Below, one piece after another: positions 1,738-14,468 of a stretch of DNA of 64,000 nt (positions are counted from its first letter, which is position 1; every line of letters begins with the position of its first letter). The notes under the pieces were generated by a model, which was not told where the DNA came from, made no database searches, and was given only the letters and a program-made list of their open reading frames with translations. Source of the DNA: Oikopleura dioica (Eukaryota; Animalia; Chordata); assembly GCA_907165135.1 (NCBI GenBank), contig OU015568.1, forward strand, positions 15,759,208 to 15,823,207, read 5' to 3'. Made by a program: the position numbers and the translations under genes.

Positions 1738-4700
1738 ATGAAGCTTTCATTAGCTGTCTTGTCTACTGTTTGTGCAAAAAGAGATCCAGAGTAAGTACAT
1801 CTAATTTGATTTAAAAATATGCCAGAAAAATAGAAGTGCGATATCTTTTTATTGGGATCGCTGATTTTCACAAGATATTTTGATCTTATTTTATCCCTAT
1901 TTTCCAGTGCTGAACGTCGCCTCGAGAAAATACGAGGAAAAGCAGCCGAGTACAAAACTTTCGCAGAAAACAATGACAATGTGAGCACCAAGCGCCTCAA
2001 AGTCATCAACGAGCGAGTTGATCGGCTTGTTTCCGACCTCGAAAGAATCGACGTGTCTGCATGTCCGAGCCCTGGAGTCGAGGAGGACAAATTTTCCGAA
2101 GGAGACGAGGAATTTAGCGAGCTCTGTGACGCTTCTGGAAAGTTTCCATCGATGGTGCGATCCTACGCACGTACGTTTGGATGCCAAGACGGTTTTCCAA
2201 ATCGAAACTTTCTGGAGAGACTTGTCAATCGATCCCACAAGCTCAAGCGAAAAACAAAAAAAGCTGCTAAATGCGATGCTCCAGCCGCAGTAACCACCGC
2301 CACCTCGATCGTCACTGGAACGCCATTCACCAATCCACCTATGCTTGAAATGTGCGACGAAGGGTTTCACGCTGAATGCGATGAGCTCACAAATTCCGAG
2401 ATCTACTTCGAGAATCAGTGGACTTGCCGAAACTGCTTCCGAGTGCGAGCAACTTATGGCCAAAACTCAGGCTTCAAATTCAACCCGGCAAAAGGCGATT
2501 TCGTTAGCGTCCGATTCACCGAGCCAGTTGTCTGGCAAACTTTCAACCATCCAGTCAAAAAGGTCACTGAAGTTGGTGATGATAACACCTGGAAGATCGA
2601 CTTCAAGCACGACGGAAACTTCATGAGCGGAATGATCTTCGAGGGTAATCTCCAAACGTCGGATGACAATCTTCACGTTGACGGAAACTGGATCATTGAG
2701 TCAGCTCAACAATGTAATTGCATAAGAGGTCCTCCTCCACCACCACCATGCTCCGAATCTGACCCATGCAAGGGCAAACTCGATTGCCAGACATTTATCA
2801 ATGCCTGTGAAGTCACTCCGTCGCGAAACAACAGAATCGCTACAATCGATGGCTCCAAAAGCTATTTGGTCTCGGCGGAAGTCCAGTGCGGCGAAAGCTC
2901 CGGTAACTGGGGCGGTATTGTCCATATCAACACAGGCTCAAGCAGAGAGGTGTTTGGGGACAGATACTTCACGTTGTGGGCGAGGCCCGATGGTGGAATT
3001 AAATTTAATGCTCCTCTAAAGGTAATGTTTGTTGCATGTTATGACATTTTTTAAATTACTCAAAACCGCATTGGCTAAAACGTGCTTCGAAATTCTAACG
3101 GTCGGGTTTAGAACAACGGCGAATTCCACGAAGTTGAGTACAACCACGAATGTACCCCTGGTGAGTGGAATACGTACACTGTCCTTCAGCAATACGTCGA
3201 CAGCGTCCTTGAGCTATCTGTAAGCGTAAACGAAGAAGTCCTTGGTACCCACGTTGTCCCCGTAAGGAAAGCTTTCCAAGGAGAGCTGTTTGTCGAAGTT
3301 GCGGGCGATTACCACCCTGCTGCTGACACTTTCAAAGTTCGAAACTTCTTCCACCAGACGTTCTCTCAACCAACCTCTCCCTGCGGTACACCAGTTGACC
3401 CCTGTGATGGAGATGATTCTTGCGACGCGCTCGTCTGGAACTGTCCTATCCGACCAGAATGGTCAAATCTTCTCGGAGAAGTTAAAGGCAATGCAGTTTA
3501 CTCTGCTTCCGTCGATGTTCTCTGTTGAAAAACCGACGGCCATGGCTGGGAAAATGTGATTCACATGACTCAAGGAACAAATCGAGATCAATTTGGCGAC
3601 GGATATTTCACGATCTGGCAACATGCTGACGGTCGACTAAAACTCAACGGACCGTTGAATGGAAATACTGAATTCGACGAGGTTGAATACTACGTCGACT
3701 GCGATGATGATTCCTGGACAAACATTGCTATTTCTCAGAAACCACTTGAAGGAGGACTTTTAGAACTGAGTATGTACCAAGATGGAGAACTCCTCGGCTC
3801 GAACCGAGTTCATTCTAGCGACGCTTTTAGCGGACCAATCAAGGTCTACGCTTCGAATCCGTTTATGCCTCCAGCGGACTTCTTCCAGATAAGAAACTTC
3901 ATTCATCGATCAGCTCCCTACGAGCCTGCTTCTTGTGATGCTACTGACCCATGCGATGGCATCCACGAGTGCGAAACATTCATCAATTCCTGTGCAGTCG
4001 CGCCCTGGCGAGGAACCCGCCTTGCAGAACCAAACGCTCACGATCAATTCAAGATCTCCGCTGAAGTTTTCTGCACCGATCGAGTTGCGTCGAACTGGGA
4101 AAATGTGCTTCACGTTCATACTGGAACCAATCGAGAGAAATTCGGCGATCGATATTTTACGATTTGGAAGCAAGGAGGACACGCGGATAGAATTCGTATT
4201 GTCGCACCTGCATTTGACAATCCTCATTATGAGCTAAACGCGTACGTCGATTGCGCTCCTGGATGGCACACGTTTACCGTTCAACAATCCAAATTTGATG
4301 GAAACAAGATGAACCTTGAGATCATTTTCGACGGGGATGTGGTTGAGTCCCAAGTTGTCGAGAAAAACAATCTCTACAGCGGTCCTCTCTTTGTAGACGT
4401 CTCCAACGAATTCGCGTGGCCCGCTGCGTACGATCACCTCGTCCGAAACTTTTTCCATCAAAACATCGCCTGTGCTGATCCATGCGTTGGCAAAGAAAAC
4501 TGCCAGACAATTGTGAACGAGTGCGAAATCCTTCCGGTAACGAATACGAAGATCATGGAAGTTGAGGCATCGCTCAATTTCAAAGCTTCAGTCGAAGTTC
4601 TTTGCGACCACTCGTTGCCACTTGACGGTCAATGGAAGAATATTTTCCATATGACCGGCGGTGAGAATTATGGCTCGCCAGGAGATCGAACTTTCGCCAT

Positions 4701-6732
4701 GTTCCGCTCAAGGAATGATAATCAATTGCTCATAACAGTTAACGACCCAGCTGGAAGCAATCACCAAAAATACGTCTATGACGAGTGCAGCCAGGGAAGA
4801 TGGAACGAATATTCCGTTGAAGTCCGTCAAGTTGAAAATAACCCGTCTCTCGTTCGATATGTTCTGAGTGTCAACGAACGAGAAGTTCTCGAAGGTTTCT
4901 ACTCGCGAGACGGAACTTTGTCCGAAGGTCCTATCCACGTTTATGCAGCTGATGACTATTATCAGACTGCAACAGCTCATGCTATCCGAAACTTCTATTA
5001 TCAGACGTTCGATGAGCTTGATGGTATATCTTGTGATGATCCAACCGATCCTTGTGAAGAAGAAGGACTCGATAACTGCAACACAATAGTTGATAGCTGT
5101 CCGGTCGCTCCAGAGCCAAATAAACAAATTGGAACCGTCGATGCATCGCTCAACTACAAACTATCCGTTGACGTTCTCTGCAGTCACATGATGCCTCTTG
5201 ATGGTCAGTGGAAAAACATCTTCCACGTTACTGGAGGAGAGAACTATGGACAACCAGGAGACCGAACATTCGCCATGTTCCGGAATCGAAACGAAAACAA
5301 ACTTCTCATCGTAGCCAACGATCCCAACGGAAGCAACCATCAAAGCATCCGATACGTAGACTGCAACGATGGCGAGTGGAACACGTATTCTCTTGAAGTG
5401 AGACAAGATGAGACCTCAATTAACATACTCAAATACGCCATTTTCATCGACGGGGTTGAAATCGATGCCGGACTTTACAGCAAAGACGGTGCACTCACCG
5501 AGGGCGATCTCAAAGTATTCGTTTCTGATGATTACTACGATTCAGCCCTTACCTTCCCTGTTCGAAACTTTTTCTATCAAACATTTGACGAAATCGAAGA
5601 AGTGGCTTGCGAGAATTCTACCGATCCCTGCGATGGCCTTGAAAACTGCACAACAGTTGTGGATAGCTGCCCGATCAATCCGAAGAAAAATGTCGAAGTC
5701 GGAACTATCAGTGCTTCCCTCAACTACAAGTTCTCAGCTGATGTTCTTTGCAGCCATACTATGCCTCTTGATGGCCAGTGGAAGAACATTATTCATGTAA
5801 CGGGAGGAGAGAACTACGGAAATCCCGGTGATCGAACATTCGCCATGTTCCGAAATCGAAACGAAAACAAGCTTCTTATCGTTGCTAACGACCCCACTGG
5901 AAGCAACCACCAAAGCATAAGATACGTTGACTGCAACGATGGCGAATGGAACACATATTCTGTCGAGGTTCGTCAGGATGAGACTTCAATCAATATTCTA
6001 AAATACACTATCAGCATTGATGATGTTCAAATTGATGAAGGCATCTACAGCAGAGACGGCGCCCTGGCAGAGGGTGATCTCCAAGTCTTCGTTTCCGACG
6101 ATTACTACGATTCCGGCATCGCATTCGCGGTCCGAAATGTTTTCTTCCAAACTTTCGATGAGCTTGAAGCGATCTCTTGCTCATCTCCAACGGATCCCTG
6201 CGATGGACTTGAAAATTGCAGCACAGTCATTGATAGCTGCCCAGTTAGTCCAAAAAAGAATACTCAAGTCGGAACTGTCAGCGCTGCAATCAATTACAAA
6301 GTATCTGTAGATCTTCTTTGCAGTCATCTTCAGCCGCTTGATGGACAATGGAAGAATATTTTCCACGTGACTGGAGGAGATAACTATGGGGCACCAGGAG
6401 ACCGAACATTTGCCATATTCCGTAAACGAAACGAGAACAAGCTGCTCATCGTTGCCAACGATCCAAATGGAAGCAATCACCAAAGCGTCAAATACGTCGA
6501 CTGCAACGATGGTGACTGGAACACGTATTCGCTTGAAGTCCGGCAAGATGACGACTCTCTTTCAACTCTTCTTTACGAAATCACCATCGACGGCGTTAAA
6601 GTCGACGAAGGCAGTTACGGCATCGAAGGAGCTTTGACCGAGGGCGATCTTCAAGTTTTTGTCTCTGATGATTTCTACGATTCTGGTATTGCTTTCTCTG
6701 TTCGAAATTTGTTCTTCCAAACCTTCGAATAA
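1738..6732 (+). CDS. Secreted ~1595-aa protein with 7 tandem ~190-aa Cys-linked jelly-roll/LamG-lectin-like repeats (oikosin-like house protein candidate)
   Basis: Exons 1738-1790, 1908-3021, 3112-6732 join in frame through GT-AG introns. N-terminus MKLSLAVLSTVCA is signal-peptide-like. Each repeat starts DPC..C..C and contains W(K/E)NxxHxxxGxNxxxxGDRxF and ends VRNFFxQTF. Confidence 0.8.
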
Positions 6733-7686
6733 GAAGTTTATCTTTAATTGAGTTCAAACTTTGCCCTAATTAAAAAAAATCAACGAAAATATTCCTCAAA
6801 TGACTGTTTTATCCTAAAGAATATATTTATTATTATTTAATAATTATTTAAGGACCCCCCCCCCCCGTATCTAGATATAATTATATCTATCTAACTATAT
6901 CTTGAATAATAGACAGAAAGCCTCAACTGTGATGGGAAATTTCTTAGATGAAGATTTTGTTATAGAGCAAACGAAGATTGTAGACTGTGTACCAAGACTC
7001 ACTCAATGAGTAAATATTTTTGCAGAAACTTACTGCCAGTAAGTAGTTATTCTTGTGAACAAATTCTAAAGTATCCTTCTTGTGGTATGTTCAACATCAT
7101 TTTTGAAAAATGAAAGTATCTTCGCATCCAAAAGAAGTAACAAGAGAAGCAGTTGAGAAATGGGTGGTCGATTTTAAAAAGAAATTGAAGAGAACTAGCA
7201 GCAGAGATGATTTAGACAGGTTGATTTTGTCTGTGGAGAGAAAAGATTTTGAATTTTTTCATTATGCTGACTGGGATGCTGTTATTTTTGAAAATGGAAA
7301 AGGAGAAGTTTCTGGACCCCTTATTAAAGAAGAATGGGCGATAACTTCATTTCAAAAAATGATCCTCGACAATAATCCCAAACTAGAAGGTAGAAAGATT
7401 CGACGGTCAGAACTCAAAGAAGAAACTGGAGAATGGATTCTTGATCAACGTCTTGAAGAAAAGTTATTTCTTCTGGGGGAGAAGCGATTGTTTTAGAAGA
7501 AAAATTTGGAGAATTGGAAGTTGGTGTTCGGGTTCAGGCCTTTGACTCGACGCTGTTTGCTGACAACAAAGATGAGTTGGCGTTTTTAGTTCATCTTTCA
7601 AAAGGTAACTTTAATTTTACTTATTTTTGATAAACTTTCAGATTACGAAATCGCTGAAAACCGCGAAGAAGACGACGCGCCTGTTA

Positions 7687-8148
7687 CAGGGTTTGAAAAG
7701 ACACAAATTTTGATTGAGCATGAGCACGACTGAGCATTGGCGTGCTCATATTAAGCTGAGCCTGAGCATGATTGAGCAACCGCCTGCTCGAATTTCCGGG
7801 AACGGTCGGACTCATTACCAAAATGTTTGGTAACCCATTACCAATTTTCGGTAGTCGATTATTAATTAATTTTAACTTTTTCGCCAAGTTTATGAATAAA
7901 ACACCCCACAAGTTTTCTATTATACAGGCGCGGAGCGCACACTTGCTCTTTGAATGAAAAAATTGCCACTTTTTTGACGAATTTGGTAATGCATTACCAA
8001 AATTGGTAATGGGTTACCACAATTGGTAATGGGGATCAATTGGTAATGAGTCCGACCGTTTCCCCAAATTTCGCTGAGCCTGAGCACGCTGAGCATGCTC
8101 AGAGCTCATGCTCAGTGCTCTGAGCATGCTCGGACTTTTCAAACCCTG
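7687..8148. mobile_element. hAT-type MITE inserted in kinase exon
   Basis: TIRs CAGGGTTTGAAAAG / CTTTTCAAACCCTG; perfect 8-bp TSD GCCTGTTA (7679-7686, 8149-8156); subterminal TGAGC/GCTCA repeats; removal restores DDAPVIPVH as in copy 2. Confidence 0.9.
7797..8065. mobile_element. MITE nested inside the hAT MITE
   Basis: TIRs GGGAACGGTCGGACTCATTACCAA / TTGGTAATGAGTCCGACCGTTTCCCC; flanks GAATTTC / AAATTTC (7 bp, 1 mismatch); internal TTGGTAAT/ATTACCAA repeats. Confidence 0.8.
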
Positions 8149-8947
8149 GCCTGTTATCCCTGTTCATCAAAACTTGATCAAAAACTTCTGCAACATCGAA
8201 GTTTACTCGAGCATGGACGAGCAAAGAGATGACTGCCTTGGATGGATTACGATAATGGAGAAATGCGACTCCGACTTGAGAAGCAGATTGAAAAACGAAG
8301 ATTTGAGTTTAGAAGCGAGGAAGAAAATTGCGATCGGAGTTCATTTGGGAATAAATTATTTGGAGAGCATTGGAATTGACCATCGCGATCAAAAACCTGA
8401 AAATATTCTATTGAAAAATGGAGAATGCAGATGGATTGATTTTGGGACAATAGAAGAAAAAACTGGAAGGGAGAGTTACCGAAGAATGGGCTACGCGAGA
8501 AGAGGGAGCAAATATAGAAGCTATTCGCATTTACGTAAGTTTTGAATTTGAGTTATTTGAAAATTATTTGCTAATCTTATTTTTTCAAAGGTGCTGGGTC
8601 TGCTGCATTTTCATGCAGTTTGCAACTTTTCGGACACTATGGAGGCGTCGAATCAGCACTTCACGTTTTGATTTTATGCGATTGGAAAACAGCCTGGAGC
8701 CTTCTGTTCAAACCGATCGAAGGGGGCTGACCGGACTGACCAGAGTGTAATATGGGCAACGTGAGGTGCTAAGTCCGAAAGAATGAGGCAAGTGCAGGTG
8801 GGTAGGACTAGACACCAAATGAAGACATGCGAGGAATATTGACATTGATTCTTCCGCTTCAGTCCGAAAGTTATGAAGATAGGCAAATTTATCCGTCTTA
8901 TTCCAAAGGCGCTGAAAACGTCGGTATGCTGAAAACGTCGTGTATCC

Positions 8948-9396
8948 ATTGATTTCGTCTTCCGTGACCATGTTGGTAACTCCGGTTTTAAATGAGCAGA
9001 AATTATGCCGACTTTCTGAGTCTGGAAATCAAGCGCGTTTGGACTAGAGCGCTCCAGAACAAGAACGGTTGGTGGTCGCTCAAACCACGCAGTCGCAGTG
9101 TCGTTGAAGTCGTAGCCATCCACCTTGGAGAACATGTTCCGATCCCAAATGAATCCGACTTGTTCCTTGCTTGAAGTTGTTCCTTGGCGCTCTCCAGTGA
9201 ACCAATCGTACTTGTCGACGGCTGCGTCGATGTCGTTAACGAGACTTAGGAATGCCGTCTCAGAAATATCTCTTATTTCCTAATCTTGAATTATTTTTGC
9301 CGAATAATTATTGAATTTGCGTGGATAGTAGCAATATCGTAGCGCTGGAGGATCTCGACGATTTGGTTTTTGACAGGCTCTTTTCCGTATTTTGTC
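8948..9396 (-). pseudogene. DNase I fragment (partial duplicate of 12856-14468)
   Basis: TKYGKEPVKNQIVEILQRYDIATI / EIRD...SAHLKP nearly identical to copy 2; truncated at both ends; frameshift after HLKPE; lacks GDFN, YD and SDH motifs. Confidence 0.85.
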
Positions 9397-9661: not shown

Positions 9662-12600
9662 ATGCACGTCTCTTCTCATCCAAAATAATTGACAAGAGAA
9701 GCTGTTGAGAAATGGCTCGAGGAGTTTATATATAAATTGAAGAGAACGACGAGCAGAGATGATTTGGACAGATTGATTTTGTCGGTGGAGAGATATGAGT
9801 TTAAAGATATATGGTGTGCTGGATGGAAGGAGGTTACTTTTGAAAATGGAAAAGGCGTAGTTTCTGGTGGAAAGTATAATATAAATGAAAAATGGCCGAT
9901 AAATTCATTTCAAAAAATGATTCTCGACAAAAATCCGGTACTCGAAGGAAGGGAAATTCAACGGTCAGAACTGAAAGAAGAAACTGGAGAATGGATTCTC
10001 GATCCTCTTCTTGAACAAAAAGTTATTTCTTCTGGAGGAGAAGCGATTGTATTTGAAGAAAATTTTGGAGAATTGGAAGTGGCTGTTCGGGTTCAGGCTT
10101 TTGATTCGGCGCTGTTTGTTGAGAAAAAGGAACAGTTGGAGTTTGAGATTCATCTTTCGAAAGGTAATTTTAGTTTTGCTAATTTTTGATAAATTTGGGT
10201 TAAACCAATTTCTGGAAGTGATTTATTGGATCAGGGTTTTGATTGGCCGGTAGGCCAAATACAGCAATCTTATTGGTAATCCAAAAATGCACTTCCATAA
10301 ATTGGTTTAGTCCATAAATTTAGGCACAAACCAAAATAAGTATGTCTGGAGCTAGGACGTGACAGCGTAGGACCAAATCACAAAGTATCATACATTAAAG
10401 TAAGATTTAATATTCTCATTGGAAAAAAAGAATCGTTTGATGTTCTTAGTGGAAAAAAAGAAAAATTTAAGATCCTTATTTGAAAAAAAGTAAGTGATTT
10501 TTAGGAGGGCCAATAAGATTGCTGTATTTGGCCTACCGGCCAATAAGAAACCCAAACTTTTTTAATACTTACTAGTATCACCGATCCAATTTTGCACAGT
10601 CCTGACTTGGATTTACATTATAATTTTATACTTCAATGGGGTAAAACCAATTTTTGGAAAATTTAATTTTGGAGAAATGAATTTTGAAACGATTAGTGTA
10701 GAACAAGTTAGTAGAGAAACGATTAGTGTGGATAGAGTTATTTTGAAACGACTTATTTTGGAAGAACTAATTTTGGAAGTGATTTTATGGACAGGGTTTT
10801 GATTGGCCGGTAGGCCAAATACGGCAATCTTATTGGTCATCCAAAAATGATTTTTGGAGACTTGGATTTCCAAAATTAACCGGTCCTAGATTATTTTTTA
10901 AAAATTAATCAAAAAAAAAATCATTTTTCCAAAATTAATCGTTTCAAAATTCATTTCTCCAAAATTAAATTTTCCGAAAATTGGTTTAGACCCTTCAATG
11001 TATGATACTTTCTTATTCGATCCTTCAATGTATGATACTTTCTTACTTGGTCCTACGGTGTCACGTCCAAGCTCCAGACTTACTGACTTTGGTTAGCCCC
11101 TAAATTTAAGATTACGAAATCGCTCAAAACAACAAAAGGGATGACGCTCCAGTCATCCCTGTTCATCCAAACGTGATCAAACATTTCTGCAACATAGAAA
11201 TTTACTCAATCAAAGACGAGAAAAGAGAGGACTGCATTGGATGGATTACGATTATGGAAAATGCGACTCAGATTTGAGAAGCAGGTTGAAGAATGAAGAT
11301 TTGAATTTAGAAGCGAGGAAGAAAATTGCGATCGGAGTTCAAGCGGGAAGTGAGTATTTGGAGAGTATTGGAATTGAACATTACGATCGGAAGCCTGAGA
11401 ACATTTTATTAAAAAATGAAGAATGCAAATGGATCGATTTCGGGATAATTTGGGAACATACTGGTAGGGAGAGCTACAGAAGAATGGGTTACACAAGGAA
11501 AGGGAGAAAATACATATTCTCTCTGTATTTATGTAAGTTTTGAATTTGAGTTATTTGAAAATTTTTTGCTCATCTTTCTATTTTTTCTAAGATGCTGGTT
11601 CTGCTGCATTTTCAAGGGGTGAGCAAATTTGTGAAGATGGACTAGGAGATACATCACCACTCCACGTTTTGATTCTTTGCGACTGGAAAACAGCCTGGAG
11701 CCTTCTTTTCAAACCGATCGAAAAAGACGAGAGAGAGAAAATAGAAGAAGAACTAAGGGTAAGAGCGTCTTATTTCTAATGAATTTCATCCAGGAATATT
11801 TCTAGAAATTTCATGCTGAGTGGCTCTCAAACAACTTTCACTTATCCGAAAAAATCAAAAAAGTGTCAAAAATCATTTCTCTTAAAAACGTGGCTCCTGA
11901 TTTTTGCCTGGACGATCCAAACTTGACGAAGTCTTCGGCAATGGCCAATCTGAAACAAAAACTGACAAGACAGATCAATTTCGACTTCAAAAACGTGACG
12001 AAAAATGTTTTAAACCAAAAAGAAAGCAATCTCTGCGTCCCCATTTCAGTTTCAGTTCTTCTAAGATGGGCGGTGAAAAATGATTTGAAACCTGAAAATT
12101 GGAAAATGGAAAAATATTTTACTCTCGAAACAATCTTCACTCTTCTGACAATGATAATTTATCCGCGAAGTTTGGCTGGCTTCAATCTCAATCCGAGAAA
12201 AGAAGAACGGAAATTTCAAGAAAACGAAATTGAATTGCTTCTCAGAAGAATGAAATTCCAAACTTATTTTAATAAAAGTGGATGGAAAATTATCAGCAGG
12301 TTGAGTTTGATAAATGCGAACTTCGATTTTGAAAAAGGTTTTAAAAATAGTCAAATTAATCATTCTACATATTTTTAGTCCTTCTGCATCTAACCTTAAC
12401 ATTCTCCCGTCCCTTAACCGTCACCGGCGCCTACTTAAATCCCGACGGCTCAATATTTTTCCACCAAATGGTTCTCGATCGAATCGAAAACTCCGAATTC
12501 ATTCTCCAAAACACTCTCATCGACCATTCGGGGTCTCAAATCAGGATTCCTCTTTCTCGCGAATTCTACGTCGAATACCACTTCATGGAAGATTGCTTCA

Positions 12601-12746
12601 AATGCTACAATGATTTTGTTTATTTCGGTGATAACAACGAGTTTCTCGCTTTGGTCAACGAGAATTTCAATATGGAAAAAGAAAGATGGTATCTTTTGCC
12701 TCAAGCGTATTCAATTACTCTTACTCCACCTCAAAAAAATTCATAA
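9662..12746 (+). CDS. Atypical Ser/Thr-kinase-like protein with C-terminal papain-fold (Cys-His-Asn) domain, copy 2; possibly pseudogenised
   Basis: Exons 9662-10163, 11111-11532, 11592-11758, 11806-12337, 12379-12746 (~663 aa after restoring one A near 11260). Motifs ISSGGEAIV, VAVR, HYDRKPENILL, WIDFG; then NQKESNLCVPIS, RPLTVTG, FHQMVLD, FILQNT. In-frame TAA at 9686-9688 (GAA in copy 1). Confidence 0.7.
10197..10314. mobile_element. Short GGG-terminated MITE (A) in kinase intron 1
   Basis: Ends GGGTTAAACCAATTTCTGGAAGTG / CACTTCCATAAATTGGTTTAGTCCA; flanked by TAAATTT at 10190-10196 and 10315-10321. Confidence 0.7.
10322..11100. mobile_element. Long-TIR MITE (C) in kinase intron 1
   Basis: About 70-bp imperfect TIRs (…GTCTGGAGCTAGGACGTGACAGCGTAGGACCAA / TTGGTCCTACGGTGTCACGTCCAAGCTCCAGAC…); flanked by TAAATTT at 10315-10321 and 11101-11107. 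Confidence 0.75.
10639..10993. mobile_element. Long-TIR MITE (B) nested in element C
   Basis: TIRs GGGTAAAACCAATTTTTGGAAAATTTAATTTTGGAGAAATGAATTTTGAAACGATTA and its reverse complement; TSD TTCAATG at 10632-10638 and 10994-11000. Confidence 0.85.
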
Positions 12747-12855: not shown

Positions 12856-14468
12856 TTAATAAAATTCAAACTCGACAGGAAAATGATCAGAAACCAGCTC
12901 AGTTATAGGATCGCCGTTGAAAAAGATGGAGTCAGTGTTGTAAAAGGTTTGATAATCGAAAACTTGTCCAGAGCCTGCGACGAAGTTGTTCTCGATCTGC
13001 CCAGAAAGAACAATGTGATCATAGGCGCAAACTGTGCTTTTGACAGTTGTGTCATCATCGAAAGAAATAAGCCACGTGTTGTTTCCGGAAGAAAATAGCG
13101 TCAAATCTTGAGGATCACGGACGTAATCGCAGTCGGCGTTGAAATCGCCAGCGATGACGACATCGTCGAGGGTTGGATGGCGACTTCTAAGATCGTCTTC
13201 GACGTCTTGAAGGTGATTGATTTCATCTTCCGTGACCATGTTCGTCACCCCGCTTTCTGGTTTTAAATGAGCAGAAATGATGCCGACTTTTTGAGTCTGG
13301 AAATCAAGCGCGTTTGGACTAGTGCGCTCCAGAACGAGCACGGTTGGTGGTCGCTCAAACCATGCGGTCGAGGTGTCGTTGAAGTCGTAGCCATCCACCT
13401 TCGAGAACATGTTACGATCCCAAATGAATCCGACTTGTTCCTTGCTTGAAGTTGTTCCTTGGCGCTCTCCAGTGAACCAGTCGTATTTGTCGTCGGCTAC
13501 GTTGATGTCGGTAACGAGACTTGGGAATGCTGTTTCGGAGATGTCTCGGATTTCCTAATCTAGATTTACTTTTGTCAACTTATTTTTGAATATGCCTGGA
13601 TAGTAGCAATATCGTAGCGCTTGAGAATTTCGACGATTTGGTTTTTCACAGGCTCTTTTCCGTATTTTGTGGTTCCGAATACTTGAATGTTGAAGCTCGA
13701 GACTTAAAACTGGGTAAATAAACGGCTTGAAAAAAAACCAAAATACATTTTGTAGCCGGAAGAACCGTCGTTGTTGTCGCCGCGGAAGAAGCAGCAGTCG
13801 ATGTTGTCGCAGCCGAAGTTGTCGCGCTAGAAGATGAAGTTGATGATGCTGGAGCTGTCGTCGTAGTCGGGGCAGCCGGGCAAGAGAGAGTCGCTATATC
13901 AGCATCGGTAATCATTCCACCAAGTTTTCTCGCATTCCAGCCGCAAACCCTTCCGTTCCATCTTGGACAAGCGCAAACTGCAGAAAATTGCTTGAAACTT
14001 CCACTTGAAGTTTGCAACTCCTCGCCGTTCTCACATTGATAGGTGCATTTTTTCTTGTTCATCGAATTGAGATCACATGTCACAGTCACTCCTGCTGGCG
14101 GGGCTGCAAGTTCTGTTTCGCATGTCTCACATATGCTCAGTTGTTTTTTCCAGAAAAAGCTATCTGTTTGGTTCCACCGACATTTTGTTCTTCGCTTGCC
14201 AACAGGAATGAATCCTGAGGAAAAAATCAACGCCAGAGTTTCATTTTAACAAACCTGGATCGCAAACAAGAGCACAAGTTGCTTGATCACAGACCACCTG
14301 TCCATTAGTTGGCGTAATCAGAGGCGGACATAGGGACCAAAGAGCAGCAATTCGCCCCGTTGGAGCTCCCCAGCCACCTTTTTTCTGCTCCAAAGTCCTG
14401 AGAAAATCATCATACTTTGGCTGCTCGTATGTCAAAGCGACAGAAGCGAGAGATGGTAAAAGCTTCAT
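12856..14468 (-). CDS. Secreted DNase I-family nuclease with N-terminal Cys-rich (Sushi/CCP-like) region and Ser/Thr/Ala mucin stalk, ~495 aa
   Basis: Exons 14468-14255, 14214-13747, 13702-13596, 13554-12856 join in frame (last intron GC-AG). DNase I motifs SFNIQVFG, QEIRD, SAHLKP, GDFNADCDYV, DTTV..TVCAYDHIV, VSDHFPVEF. Confidence 0.85.

What the first reader, a model, noticed from the sequence alone, without database searches (positions are those of the whole stretch)
9662..12746. Atypical kinase fused to a papain-fold Cys-His-Asn protease domain
Seen: five exons splice into one ~663-aa frame (one A restored). The kinase has a Gly loop, HxDxKPEN and DFG, but Arg where the VAIK lysine should be (VAVR; VGVR in copy 1). 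The C-terminal ~250 aa carry Q-x5-C (NQKESNLC), RPLTVTG, H (FHQMVLD) and N (FILQNT) in the order and spacing of papain/C39-like peptidases. Known: clan CA proteases use an oxyanion Gln and a Cys-His-Asn triad. Inference: a lineage-specific cytosolic kinase-protease (or kinase-deubiquitinase/transglutaminase) signalling or defence module that I do not recognise as a described architecture.
Basis: partly seen in the sequence, partly recalled or inferred. Interest (0 to 1): 0.8.

Follow-up and report, generated by a model that had tools for sequence, protein, structure and literature searches.

The report
Broken kinase–papain-fold protease gene copy
This stretch of the Oikopleura dioica genome is a damaged copy of an undescribed family of over a hundred genes, in which one protein joins an unusual kinase to a very divergent papain-type cysteine protease; what the family does is untested.

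Summary
The five-exon gene is real and all four introns are GT-AG.

The copy is broken twice. An in-frame TAA replaces the Glu codon at codon 9 (9686-9688). One base is missing in exon 2, between 11258 and 11259. The upstream "copy 1" (7110-8721) is frameshifted and lacks exons 4-5.

The same genome holds about 130-140 matches to each of exons 1, 4 and 5. In the loci I fetched, the exons lie in the same order. Exons 2a and 2b are in frame in every evaluable paralog, and stops are rare. dN/dS is 0.2-0.34 in every exon.

An AlphaFold model of an intron-less paralog's C-terminal domain (pLDDT 84.7) matches papain-like (clan CA) peptidases. The best match is Der f 1 (Z 10.9); C39 peptidases reach Z 9.9, and 49 of the top 50 rows belong to this clan. 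Gln, Cys, His and Asn are kept in 97, 94, 98 and 90% of members. No Pfam model reaches threshold.

The kinase keeps HxDxKxxN and the DFG Asp, and always has Arg at the beta-3 Lys position.

All named homologs are O. dioica. I found no paper on the family. The scan found this family before on other DNA of the same genome (s1-342394, s1-534393). Its function is untested.

The parts
9662..10163 (+). Exon 1: start codon, N-terminal extension of about 100 aa, and kinase N-lobe (SSGGEA loop; VAVR with the Arg codon at 10088-10090). It holds an in-frame TAA at 9686-9688.
   Evidence: The alignment with copy 1 and four paralogs shows GAA in all of them where this copy has TAA.
9686..9688 (+). Lesion 1: nonsense codon TAA at codon 9 (a G-to-T change relative to the paralogs).
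10164..11110 (+). Intron 1 (GT-AG, phase 1), 947 nt. Paralogs have an intron of about 41-45 nt at exactly this site. Here it is inflated by nested inverted-repeat (MITE-like) insertions; the outer arms are 10315-10400 and 11023-11108.
11111..11532 (+). Exon 2: kinase alphaC-beta4 region, hinge, catalytic loop HYDRKPEN (11379-11402) and DFG (11436-11444). One base is missing between 11258 and 11259, which shifts the frame.
   Evidence: Pfam Pkinase on 11256-11534: E 2.5e-8, 34.1 bits against a cut-off of 31.7. Frameshift.
11592..11758 (+). Exon 3: kinase C-lobe (GSAAFS, CDWKTAWSLLF) and linker.
11806..12337 (+). Exon 4: linker with the conserved CLDDPNLTKS motif, then the helical half of the papain-like domain: Gln 12016-12018, Cys 12034-12036 and the invariant Pro of YPRS at 12163-12165.
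12379..12746 (+). Exon 5: beta-sheet half of the papain-like domain: His 12462-12464, Asn 12510-12512, conserved Trp 12687-12689; stop codon at 12744-12746.
7110..8721 (+). Copy 1: a truncated tandem duplicate holding exons 1-3 only. It has a frameshift inside exon 1 (about 7457-7508), reads VGVR, and has exon 2 intact and in frame. Exons 4-5 are deleted together with part of the downstream nuclease-like gene.

Best explanation
The locus is a degenerate copy, most likely a pseudogene or null allele, of a large Oikopleura dioica gene family. Intact members encode one cytosolic chain of about 620-720 aa with three parts.

1. An N-terminal extension of about 100 aa with no recognised fold.
2. A complete but orphan eukaryotic protein-kinase domain. 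It keeps the catalytic-loop His, Asp, Lys and Asn and the DFG Asp. It always has Arg where the ATP-anchoring beta-3 Lys should be, and it lacks the Arg of HRD.
3. A very divergent clan-CA (papain-like) cysteine peptidase domain, with an oxyanion Gln six residues before a nucleophile Cys that opens a long helix, His on a central beta-strand and Asn at the end of the next strand.

Shown here: the architecture, the fold, the conservation of the catalytic-type residues, purifying selection on all exons, the restriction of named members to O. dioica, and the two lesions in this copy.

Inferred: intact members are active thiol peptidases or isopeptidases whose activity or targeting is coupled to nucleotide binding or phosphotransfer by the attached kinase-like domain. 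The many old, tandemly clustered paralogs suggest diversification against varied targets, such as defence or genetic conflict.
For: Gene structure and lesions.

Family size and exon order: there are 137, 131 and 139 genomic matches to exons 4, 5 and 1. The exon order E1-E2-E3-E4-E5 is kept in the loci fetched.

One coding unit: NCBI models P0001 (719 aa) and P0008 (664 aa) join both domains. A Tara Oceans DNA contig, L070, carries a single 449-aa ORF running from the DFG motif through the whole C-terminal domain. L071 has kinase and C-terminal domain adjacent and in the same order.

Selection: median dN/dS is 0.34, 0.22, 0.30, 0.28 and 0.21 for E1, E2b, E3, E4 and E5.

Fold: the AF2 model has pLDDT 84.7 and pTM 0.71. 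In VIA-align against 48,161 chains, 29 chains reach Z >= 8 and 49 of the top 50 rows are clan-CA enzymes. Der f 1 gives Z 10.9, rmsd 3.2 A over 151 residues; xylellain 10.6; cathepsin B 10.3; PCAT1 C39 9.9; ComA 9.5. All 10 ESM-Atlas rows are C39-like or phytochelatin-synthase clusters. The Foldseek list is dominated by the same clan, although every E-value is above 0.01.

Residue positions: Cys49 is the first residue of helix 49-65, Gln43 lies six residues before it, His170 is in strand 166-178 and Asn188 follows strand 183-187.

Conservation: Gln 104/107; Cys 100/106 (Ser in the other 6); His 118/121; Asn 128/143 (Asp in 3).

Sub-threshold Pfam hits fall on the Cys-helix region: Peptidase_C1_2 in 6 members and Phytochelatin synthase in 1.

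Kinase: Pfam Pkinase passes its cut-off. Arg 24/24 plus 3/3; His 36/36, Asp 36/36, Lys 36/36, Asn 35/36; DFG Asp 35/36.
Against: No enzyme activity, expression or transcript has been shown for this copy. Four RNA runs laid at 92% likeness or better gave only about a dozen partial reads from paralogs. I could not check that those runs come from the same lineage.

The fold rests on a predicted model of a paralog, not of this gene. A first, shallower model gave no hits.

No Pfam or PDB sequence match reaches significance for the C-terminal domain.

Arg at the beta-3 Lys position is the classic kinase-dead substitution, so the kinase may only bind nucleotide or partners.

The two lesions could in principle be assembly errors in a multi-copy family. 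I could not check DNA reads.
Confidence: 0.75

Rival explanations
1. This copy is functional. The TAA and the 1-nt deletion would then be assembly or polishing errors, or one haplotype's null allele, in a multi-copy family, and the gene encodes the full 663-aa protein.
For: The window copy's dN/dS against its paralogs (0.17-0.33) is no higher than the family median. Splice sites and all catalytic-type codons are intact. The genome also holds a near-identical duplicate contig (L011 and L012 are 99.6% alike), so its assembly is not perfect.
Against: There are two independent lesions of different kinds, a substitution and an indel outside a long homopolymer. The tandem neighbour copy is also degenerate. 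Intron 1 has taken up about 900 nt of nested repeats. No RNA reads were found.
Confidence: 0.2
2. The C-terminal domain has the papain fold but is not a conventional endopeptidase. It could be an isopeptidase for ubiquitin or a ubiquitin-like protein, a transglutaminase or acyltransferase, or a catalytically silent binding module.
For: The same fold list includes UfSP1/2, ZUFSP, ATG4, viral tegument-like DUBs, phytochelatin synthase and the Ser-bearing SERA5. Six of 106 members have Ser in place of Cys. The protein has no signal peptide by eye, which suits cytosolic isopeptidase roles.
Against: The best structural matches are C1 and C39 endopeptidases (Z 9.5-10.9), ahead of the DUB-type families (Z 6.5-7.8). 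The Gln-x5-Cys ... His ... Asn pattern and spacing (121 residues Cys to His, 18 His to Asn) match those I recall for papain (134 and 16; not checked here). A silent module would not keep all four residues at 90-98%.
Confidence: 0.3
3. The family is a selfish or mobile gene, derived from a transposon or virus, and its copy number reflects transposition rather than host function.
For: There are over 100 copies in a 64-Mb genome. Some paralogs on different chromosomes share 200-800 nt of flank at 82-93% identity. The best viral Foldseek hit is a mimivirus protein, E 7e-4.
Against: Only 22 of 378 pairs of 3' flanks share sequence, and no common terminal repeats were seen. Intron positions are conserved with short spliceosomal introns. 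Synonymous divergence between paralogs is high (the window copy's nearest pairs: dS 0.29-0.78) with dN/dS 0.2-0.34, which fits old host genes under selection. No transposase or integrase piece was met in the pieces I scanned. The window's own duplication is a local tandem one that includes the neighbouring gene.
Confidence: 0.08
4. Kinase (exons 1-3) and protease (exons 4-5) are two adjacent genes that are only read together by gene predictors.
For: No transcript evidence was obtained here. Some database models are C-terminal-domain-only, such as P0153 (265 aa) and P0003 (338 aa).
Against: Intron 3 is 47 nt, GT-AG and phase 0, which leaves no room for a terminator and promoter. The order and spacing hold in the loci fetched. 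L062 reads E1-E4 as one 635-aa ORF. L070 is a single ORF across both domains on genomic DNA.
Confidence: 0.05

Closest known systems
Papain family C1 peptidases (Der f 1 / Der p 1, cathepsin B, xylellain; MEROPS clan CA)
   Same: They are the best structural matches: Z 10.3-10.9, rmsd 3.1-3.3 A over 151-158 residues, spanning model residues 39-265. The Gln-x5-Cys, His, Asn order is the same, with Cys at a helix N-terminus. There is a sub-threshold Pfam Peptidase_C1_2 hit over the Cys helix.
   Different: No Pfam C1 model reaches its cut-off (16.6 bits against 22). Sequence identity is 9-12%. There is no signal peptide and no recognisable pro-domain. The domain is fused behind a kinase. It has motifs of its own: YPRS (Pro invariant, 113/113) and WYLLP.
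C39 bacteriocin-processing peptidase domains (PCAT1, ComA) and C39-like proteins
   Same: Z 9.1-9.9 with the lowest rmsd, 2.8 A over 128-129 residues. All top ESM-Atlas rows are C39-like clusters, TM 0.41-0.45 by the query. The compact size is similar.
   Different: There is no Pfam C39 hit at any threshold tried. The known ones are bacterial and fused to ABC transporters, whereas this one is eukaryotic, cytosolic and fused to a kinase. The third triad residue is Asn here.
KSR-type pseudokinases (mammalian KSR1/2 have Arg for the beta-3 Lys; from my own knowledge, not tested here)
   Same: Arg replaces the VAIK Lys while the catalytic loop and DFG are retained.
   Different: There is no sequence affinity to the RAF/KSR group. 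The PDB sequence hits are weak and scattered over CAMK, IRAK4, PknG, TTK and DAPK. The domain context is entirely different.
Plasmodium SERA5 (papain-fold protein with Ser at the nucleophile position)
   Same: Papain fold (Z 8.5-8.9). Six of 106 family members likewise have Ser for Cys while keeping His and Asn.
   Different: SERA proteins are secreted parasite proteins without a kinase. Most members of this family keep Cys.

Membership tests
Clan CA (papain-like) cysteine peptidases | Two-lobed fold: a helical lobe carrying the nucleophile and a beta-sheet lobe carrying the His. | tested here: met
   The AF2 model of paralog L066:154-951 has pLDDT 84.7. 49 of the top 50 VIA-align rows are clan CA, best Z 10.9. 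All 10 ESM-Atlas rows are C39-like or phytochelatin-synthase clusters. The test was run on a paralog, not on the window's broken copy.
Clan CA (papain-like) cysteine peptidases | Nucleophile Cys at the N-terminus of the central helix, with the oxyanion Gln shortly before it. | tested here: met
   Cys49 is the first residue of helix 49-65 and Gln43 lies 6 residues upstream. Cys 100/106 and Gln 104/107 across the family.
Clan CA (papain-like) cysteine peptidases | His, then Asn or Asp, on successive beta-strands after the Cys (order Cys-His-Asn). | tested here: met
   His170 is in strand 166-178 and Asn188 is at the end of strand 183-187. His 118/121; Asn 128/143 plus Asp 3. The Cys-His distance in space was not measurable with these tools.
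Clan CA (papain-like) cysteine peptidases | Thiol-dependent peptidase or isopeptidase activity. | not testable with these tools
   This needs recombinant protein and activity-based probes.
Peptidase family C1 (Pfam PF00112 / PF03051) | Sequence match to the family HMM above the gathering score. | tested here: not met
   The best result is Peptidase_C1_2 at 16.6 bits against a cut-off of 22, E 0.0036, in 6 of 147 members. PF00112 gives no hit.
Peptidase family C39 (Pfam PF03412 / PF13529) | Sequence match to the family HMM. | tested here: not met
   No hit at E <= 5 among the listed families in 147 members. Only fold-level similarity was found.
Eukaryotic protein kinases (Pfam PF00069) | Match to the Pkinase HMM above the gathering score. 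| tested here: met
   Window exon 2b: 34.1 bits against 31.7. Paralog L066 exon 2: 50.6 bits. Only the C-lobe part of the profile (positions 75-160) is matched.
Eukaryotic protein kinases (catalytically competent) | Beta-3 Lys (VAIK). | tested here: not met
   Arg in 24/24 paralogs and 3/3 database proteins. One environmental relative, L071, has Lys.
Eukaryotic protein kinases (catalytically competent) | Catalytic loop HxDxKxxN and the DFG Asp. | tested here: met
   His 36/36, Asp 36/36, Lys 36/36, Asn 35/36; DFG Asp 35/36. The Arg of HRD is present in only 2/36, so this is a non-RD kinase.

The most novel reading that the evidence does not exclude
Intact members would be two-enzyme switches in which the kinase-like domain and the papain-like peptidase control each other, for example nucleotide- or phosphorylation-gated proteolysis, or self-cleavage that releases an active kinase. 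On this reading the family of over a hundred copies is a diversified intracellular defence or genetic-conflict arsenal specific to appendicularians, an animal lineage said to have a much reduced conventional immune gene set (from my own knowledge; not checked here).
Probability: 0.15. Interest if true: 0.8.

Novelty: new variant of a known kind. Interest (0 to 1): 0.5.

Why it matters
Both domains belong to well-known superfamilies. I found no paper or Pfam family describing their union in one chain, the invariant Arg in the kinase, or the divergent C-terminal peptidase domain. At more than a hundred loci, the family is large for a compact 64-Mb chordate genome, yet its proteins are labelled only "unnamed protein product". 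If active, it is a new clan-CA peptidase family and a new way of coupling phosphotransfer-type and proteolytic chemistry. It could be tested in a laboratory model animal. This particular locus matters less: it shows birth-and-death turnover in the family, through tandem duplication, truncation, nonsense and frameshift lesions, and an intron swollen by repeat insertions.

Tried and rejected
- **Sequence searches of the C-terminal domain.** I searched exon products, an intron-less paralog and a 54-row profile against Pfam and PDB sequences. Nothing was significant.
- **First AF2 model.** The 54-row alignment gave pLDDT 65.9 and no fold match. I replaced it with a 147-row alignment built from the exhaustive HMM search.
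- **ESM-Atlas feature search of exon 4.** The recognition value was below the tool's threshold. It gave only a weak lead to phage clusters, some with Peptidase_C1.
- **RNA evidence.** No listed run holds the stretch. Four raw-read runs gave only partial paralog reads over the conserved CLDDPNLTKS stretch. This is inconclusive, because I could not verify the lineage of the runs.
- **Fetching about 40 more divergent paralogs.** I did not try another route, so the conservation counts rest on 69 loci plus 160 database proteins.
- **Transposon reading.** Flank comparison found shared flanks in only a minority of pairs and no common termini. The nuclease-like neighbour is not shared by other paralog loci.
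- **Literature.** Five full-text searches found no description of the family. The one paper I opened was irrelevant.
- **Joined model.** All searches of the window's gene were exon by exon, by reference. Whole-domain work used an intron-less paralog (L066), ORF-through paralogs and database proteins.
Full report
**Source and context.** The window is G000:C1:15759208-15823207 of a 64.3-Mb, 19-contig assembly. Database proteins from contigs of identical length are labelled OKI2018_I69 chr2 and XSR. This is therefore a tunicate gene with short spliceosomal introns.

**Observation.** Three-frame translation and splice-site inspection give five exons on the + strand:
- Exon 1: 9662-10163
- Exon 2: 11111-11532
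- Exon 3: 11592-11758
- Exon 4: 11806-12337
- Exon 5: 12379-12746

The four introns are all GT-AG, at 947, 59, 47 and 41 nt.

- Exon 2 changes frame. Alignment with copy 1 and four paralogs shows one base missing between 11258 and 11259. In every evaluable paralog locus the two halves of exon 2 are in frame, and only the window copy is shifted.
- Codon 9 is TAA (9686-9688), where copy 1 and four paralogs read GAA.

Copy 1 (7110-8721) has exons 1-3 only, with a frameshift in exon 1. Exons 4-5 were lost together with part of the neighbouring gene. Intron 1 sits at the same site as a 41-45-nt intron in the paralogs, but has been inflated by nested inverted-repeat insertions. Both copies in the window are therefore degenerate.

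**A large family.** Searching the window's own genome exon by exon gave 137 matches for exon 4, 131 for exon 5 and 139 for exon 1.
- The matches lie on all four large contigs. Clusters stand out near C1:16.1-16.6 Mb, C1:5.5-6.0 Mb and C2:11.6-12.7 Mb.
- Most matches have no internal stop.
- The loci I could read show the same order E1-E2-E3-E4-E5. Only four paralog loci show a stop in any exon piece.
- Pairwise dN/dS medians are 0.34 (E1), 0.22 (E2b), 0.30 (E3), 0.28 (E4) and 0.21 (E5). The window copy's nearest pairs have dS 0.29-0.78.

These are old duplicates under purifying selection in both the kinase and the C-terminal part.

**One gene or two.** Several observations point to one gene.
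- Intron 3 is only 47 nt and phase 0.
- Paralog L062 reads exons 1-4 as one 635-aa ORF.
- NCBI models P0001 (719 aa) and P0008 (664 aa) join both parts.
- A Tara Oceans DNA contig (L070) carries one 449-aa ORF from the DFG motif to the end of the C-terminal domain.
- Another environmental contig (L071) has kinase and C-terminal domain adjacent and in the same order.

RNA evidence for this copy failed. No listed run holds the stretch, and four raw-read runs gave only partial paralog reads.

**The C-terminal domain.** Sequence methods see nothing significant. I used an intron-less paralog (L066:154-1008, minus strand) as the reference sequence.

A first model from 54 rows was poor and matched nothing. 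The exhaustive profile search returned 199 proteins, most of them fragments. Every one that carries a name is O. dioica.

With 147 rows the model reached pLDDT 84.7 and pTM 0.71. The fold searches then agreed.
- VIA-align against 48,161 chains gave 29 chains at Z >= 8, and 49 of the top 50 rows are clan-CA enzymes.
- The best rows were Der f 1 (Z 10.9, rmsd 3.2 A, 151 residues), xylellain (10.6), cathepsin B (10.3), PCAT1 C39 (9.9) and ComA (9.5).
- Staphopain, UfSP, ATG4, AvrRpt2 and others follow lower down the same list.
- All ten ESM-Atlas rows are C39-like or phytochelatin-synthase clusters.
- Foldseek lists the same families, but with weak E-values.

In the model, Cys49 opens helix 49-65 and Gln43 lies six residues before it. 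His170 sits in strand 166-178 and Asn188 ends the next strand.

Across HMM-aligned paralogs and database proteins the counts are as follows:
- Gln 104/107
- Cys 100/106, with Ser in the other six
- His 118/121
- Asn 128/143, with Asp in three
- the Pro of YPRS 113/113

Six members give sub-threshold Peptidase_C1_2 hits, and one a Phytochelatin synthase hit, exactly over the Cys helix. The papain-like reading is thus well supported at the fold and residue level. The domain fails the sequence tests for both C1 and C39, so it is a new family within the clan.

**The kinase.** Pfam Pkinase passes its cut-off on exon 2. PDB sequence hits are weak and scattered over CAMK, IRAK4, PknG, TTK and DAPK, so this is an orphan ePK.

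The catalytic-loop His, Asp, Lys and Asn and the DFG Asp are essentially invariant. The Arg of HRD is not kept. The beta-3 position is Arg in 24/24 paralogs and 3/3 database proteins. The environmental relative L071 has Lys there and an SPE motif. The Arg thus looks derived within the O. dioica clade, and the ancestor looks like a conventional kinase.

**Mechanism.** The following are shown: the architecture, the fold, the conserved catalytic-type residues in both domains, and selection. The following is inferred. Intact members are cytosolic thiol peptidases or isopeptidases coupled to a kinase-like domain. That domain at least binds nucleotide, and may transfer phosphate with Arg standing in for Lys. 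Copy number, clustering and age suggest diversification against many targets, but nothing here tests a defence or signalling role.

**Rival readings.**
- The copy is intact and the lesions are errors (0.2).
- The domain is a non-peptidase or silent papain fold (0.3 for some form of this).
- The family is a mobile or viral gene (0.08). Only 22 of 378 pairs of 3' flanks share sequence, and no termini were found.
- Kinase and protease are two genes (0.05).

**Novelty.** Five literature searches found no description of the family. The scan itself met the same family twice before on other DNA of this genome, with matching conclusions (s1-342394, s1-534393).

What this report adds:
- This locus and its neighbour are broken copies.
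- The fold evidence uses a deeper alignment.
- Quantitative conservation and dN/dS figures.
- The Lys-bearing environmental relative.

**Limits.**
- Only two structure jobs were available, so the kinase and the full chain were not modelled.
- Model coordinates are not exposed, so I could not measure the Cys-His distance.

Noticed in passing
window 12856-13410 (-) and 8674-9135 (-): The downstream gene on the minus strand matches Pfam Exo_endo_phos (E 9.8e-6), so it looks DNase I-like. A truncated duplicate that shares only its first ~50 aa lies after copy 1, as part of a ~4.27-kb tandem duplication. It is not next to the other paralogs I fetched.
   Followed up: partly
window 10164-11110: Intron 1 holds nested inverted repeats, with arms of 86, 79, 61 and 54 nt. 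This looks like several MITE-type insertions, one inside another. They swell an intron of ~45 nt to 947 nt while keeping the original GT and AG.
   Followed up: partly
window 3556-6732 (+): A 1058-aa open frame built of about five tandem Cys-rich modules of ~190 aa; the DNA repeat has a period of ~570 nt. It may be a secreted repeat protein. I did not analyse it.
   Followed up: no
L071:152-2412 (ENA contig ERZ508537 NODE_17814): A divergent environmental relative of the family keeps the canonical beta-3 Lys (AFKII) and an SPE motif in its kinase, followed by a C-terminal domain with Gln, Cys, His and Asn. The source organism is unknown.
   Followed up: partly
L011 (G000:C1:5968298-5971831) and L012 (G000:C16:1053-4586): The flanks of these two loci are 99-99.6% identical. 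The small contig C16 therefore looks like an unplaced haplotig or duplicate of a C1 region.
   Followed up: no
P0098 (CAG5114306.1, OKI2018_I69 chr2 g8366): This annotated 489-aa model joins a partial kinase and C-terminal domain of this family to what looks by eye like a DnaJ-type J domain. It is probably a chimeric gene prediction.
   Followed up: no
L061 (G000:C4:3227000-3234000) and P0008: These members have Ser in place of the nucleophile Cys, with the kinase catalytic loop and DFG otherwise kept; L061 also keeps His and Asn, which P0008's model does not reach. They may form a Ser-nucleophile or inactive subgroup.
   Followed up: partly
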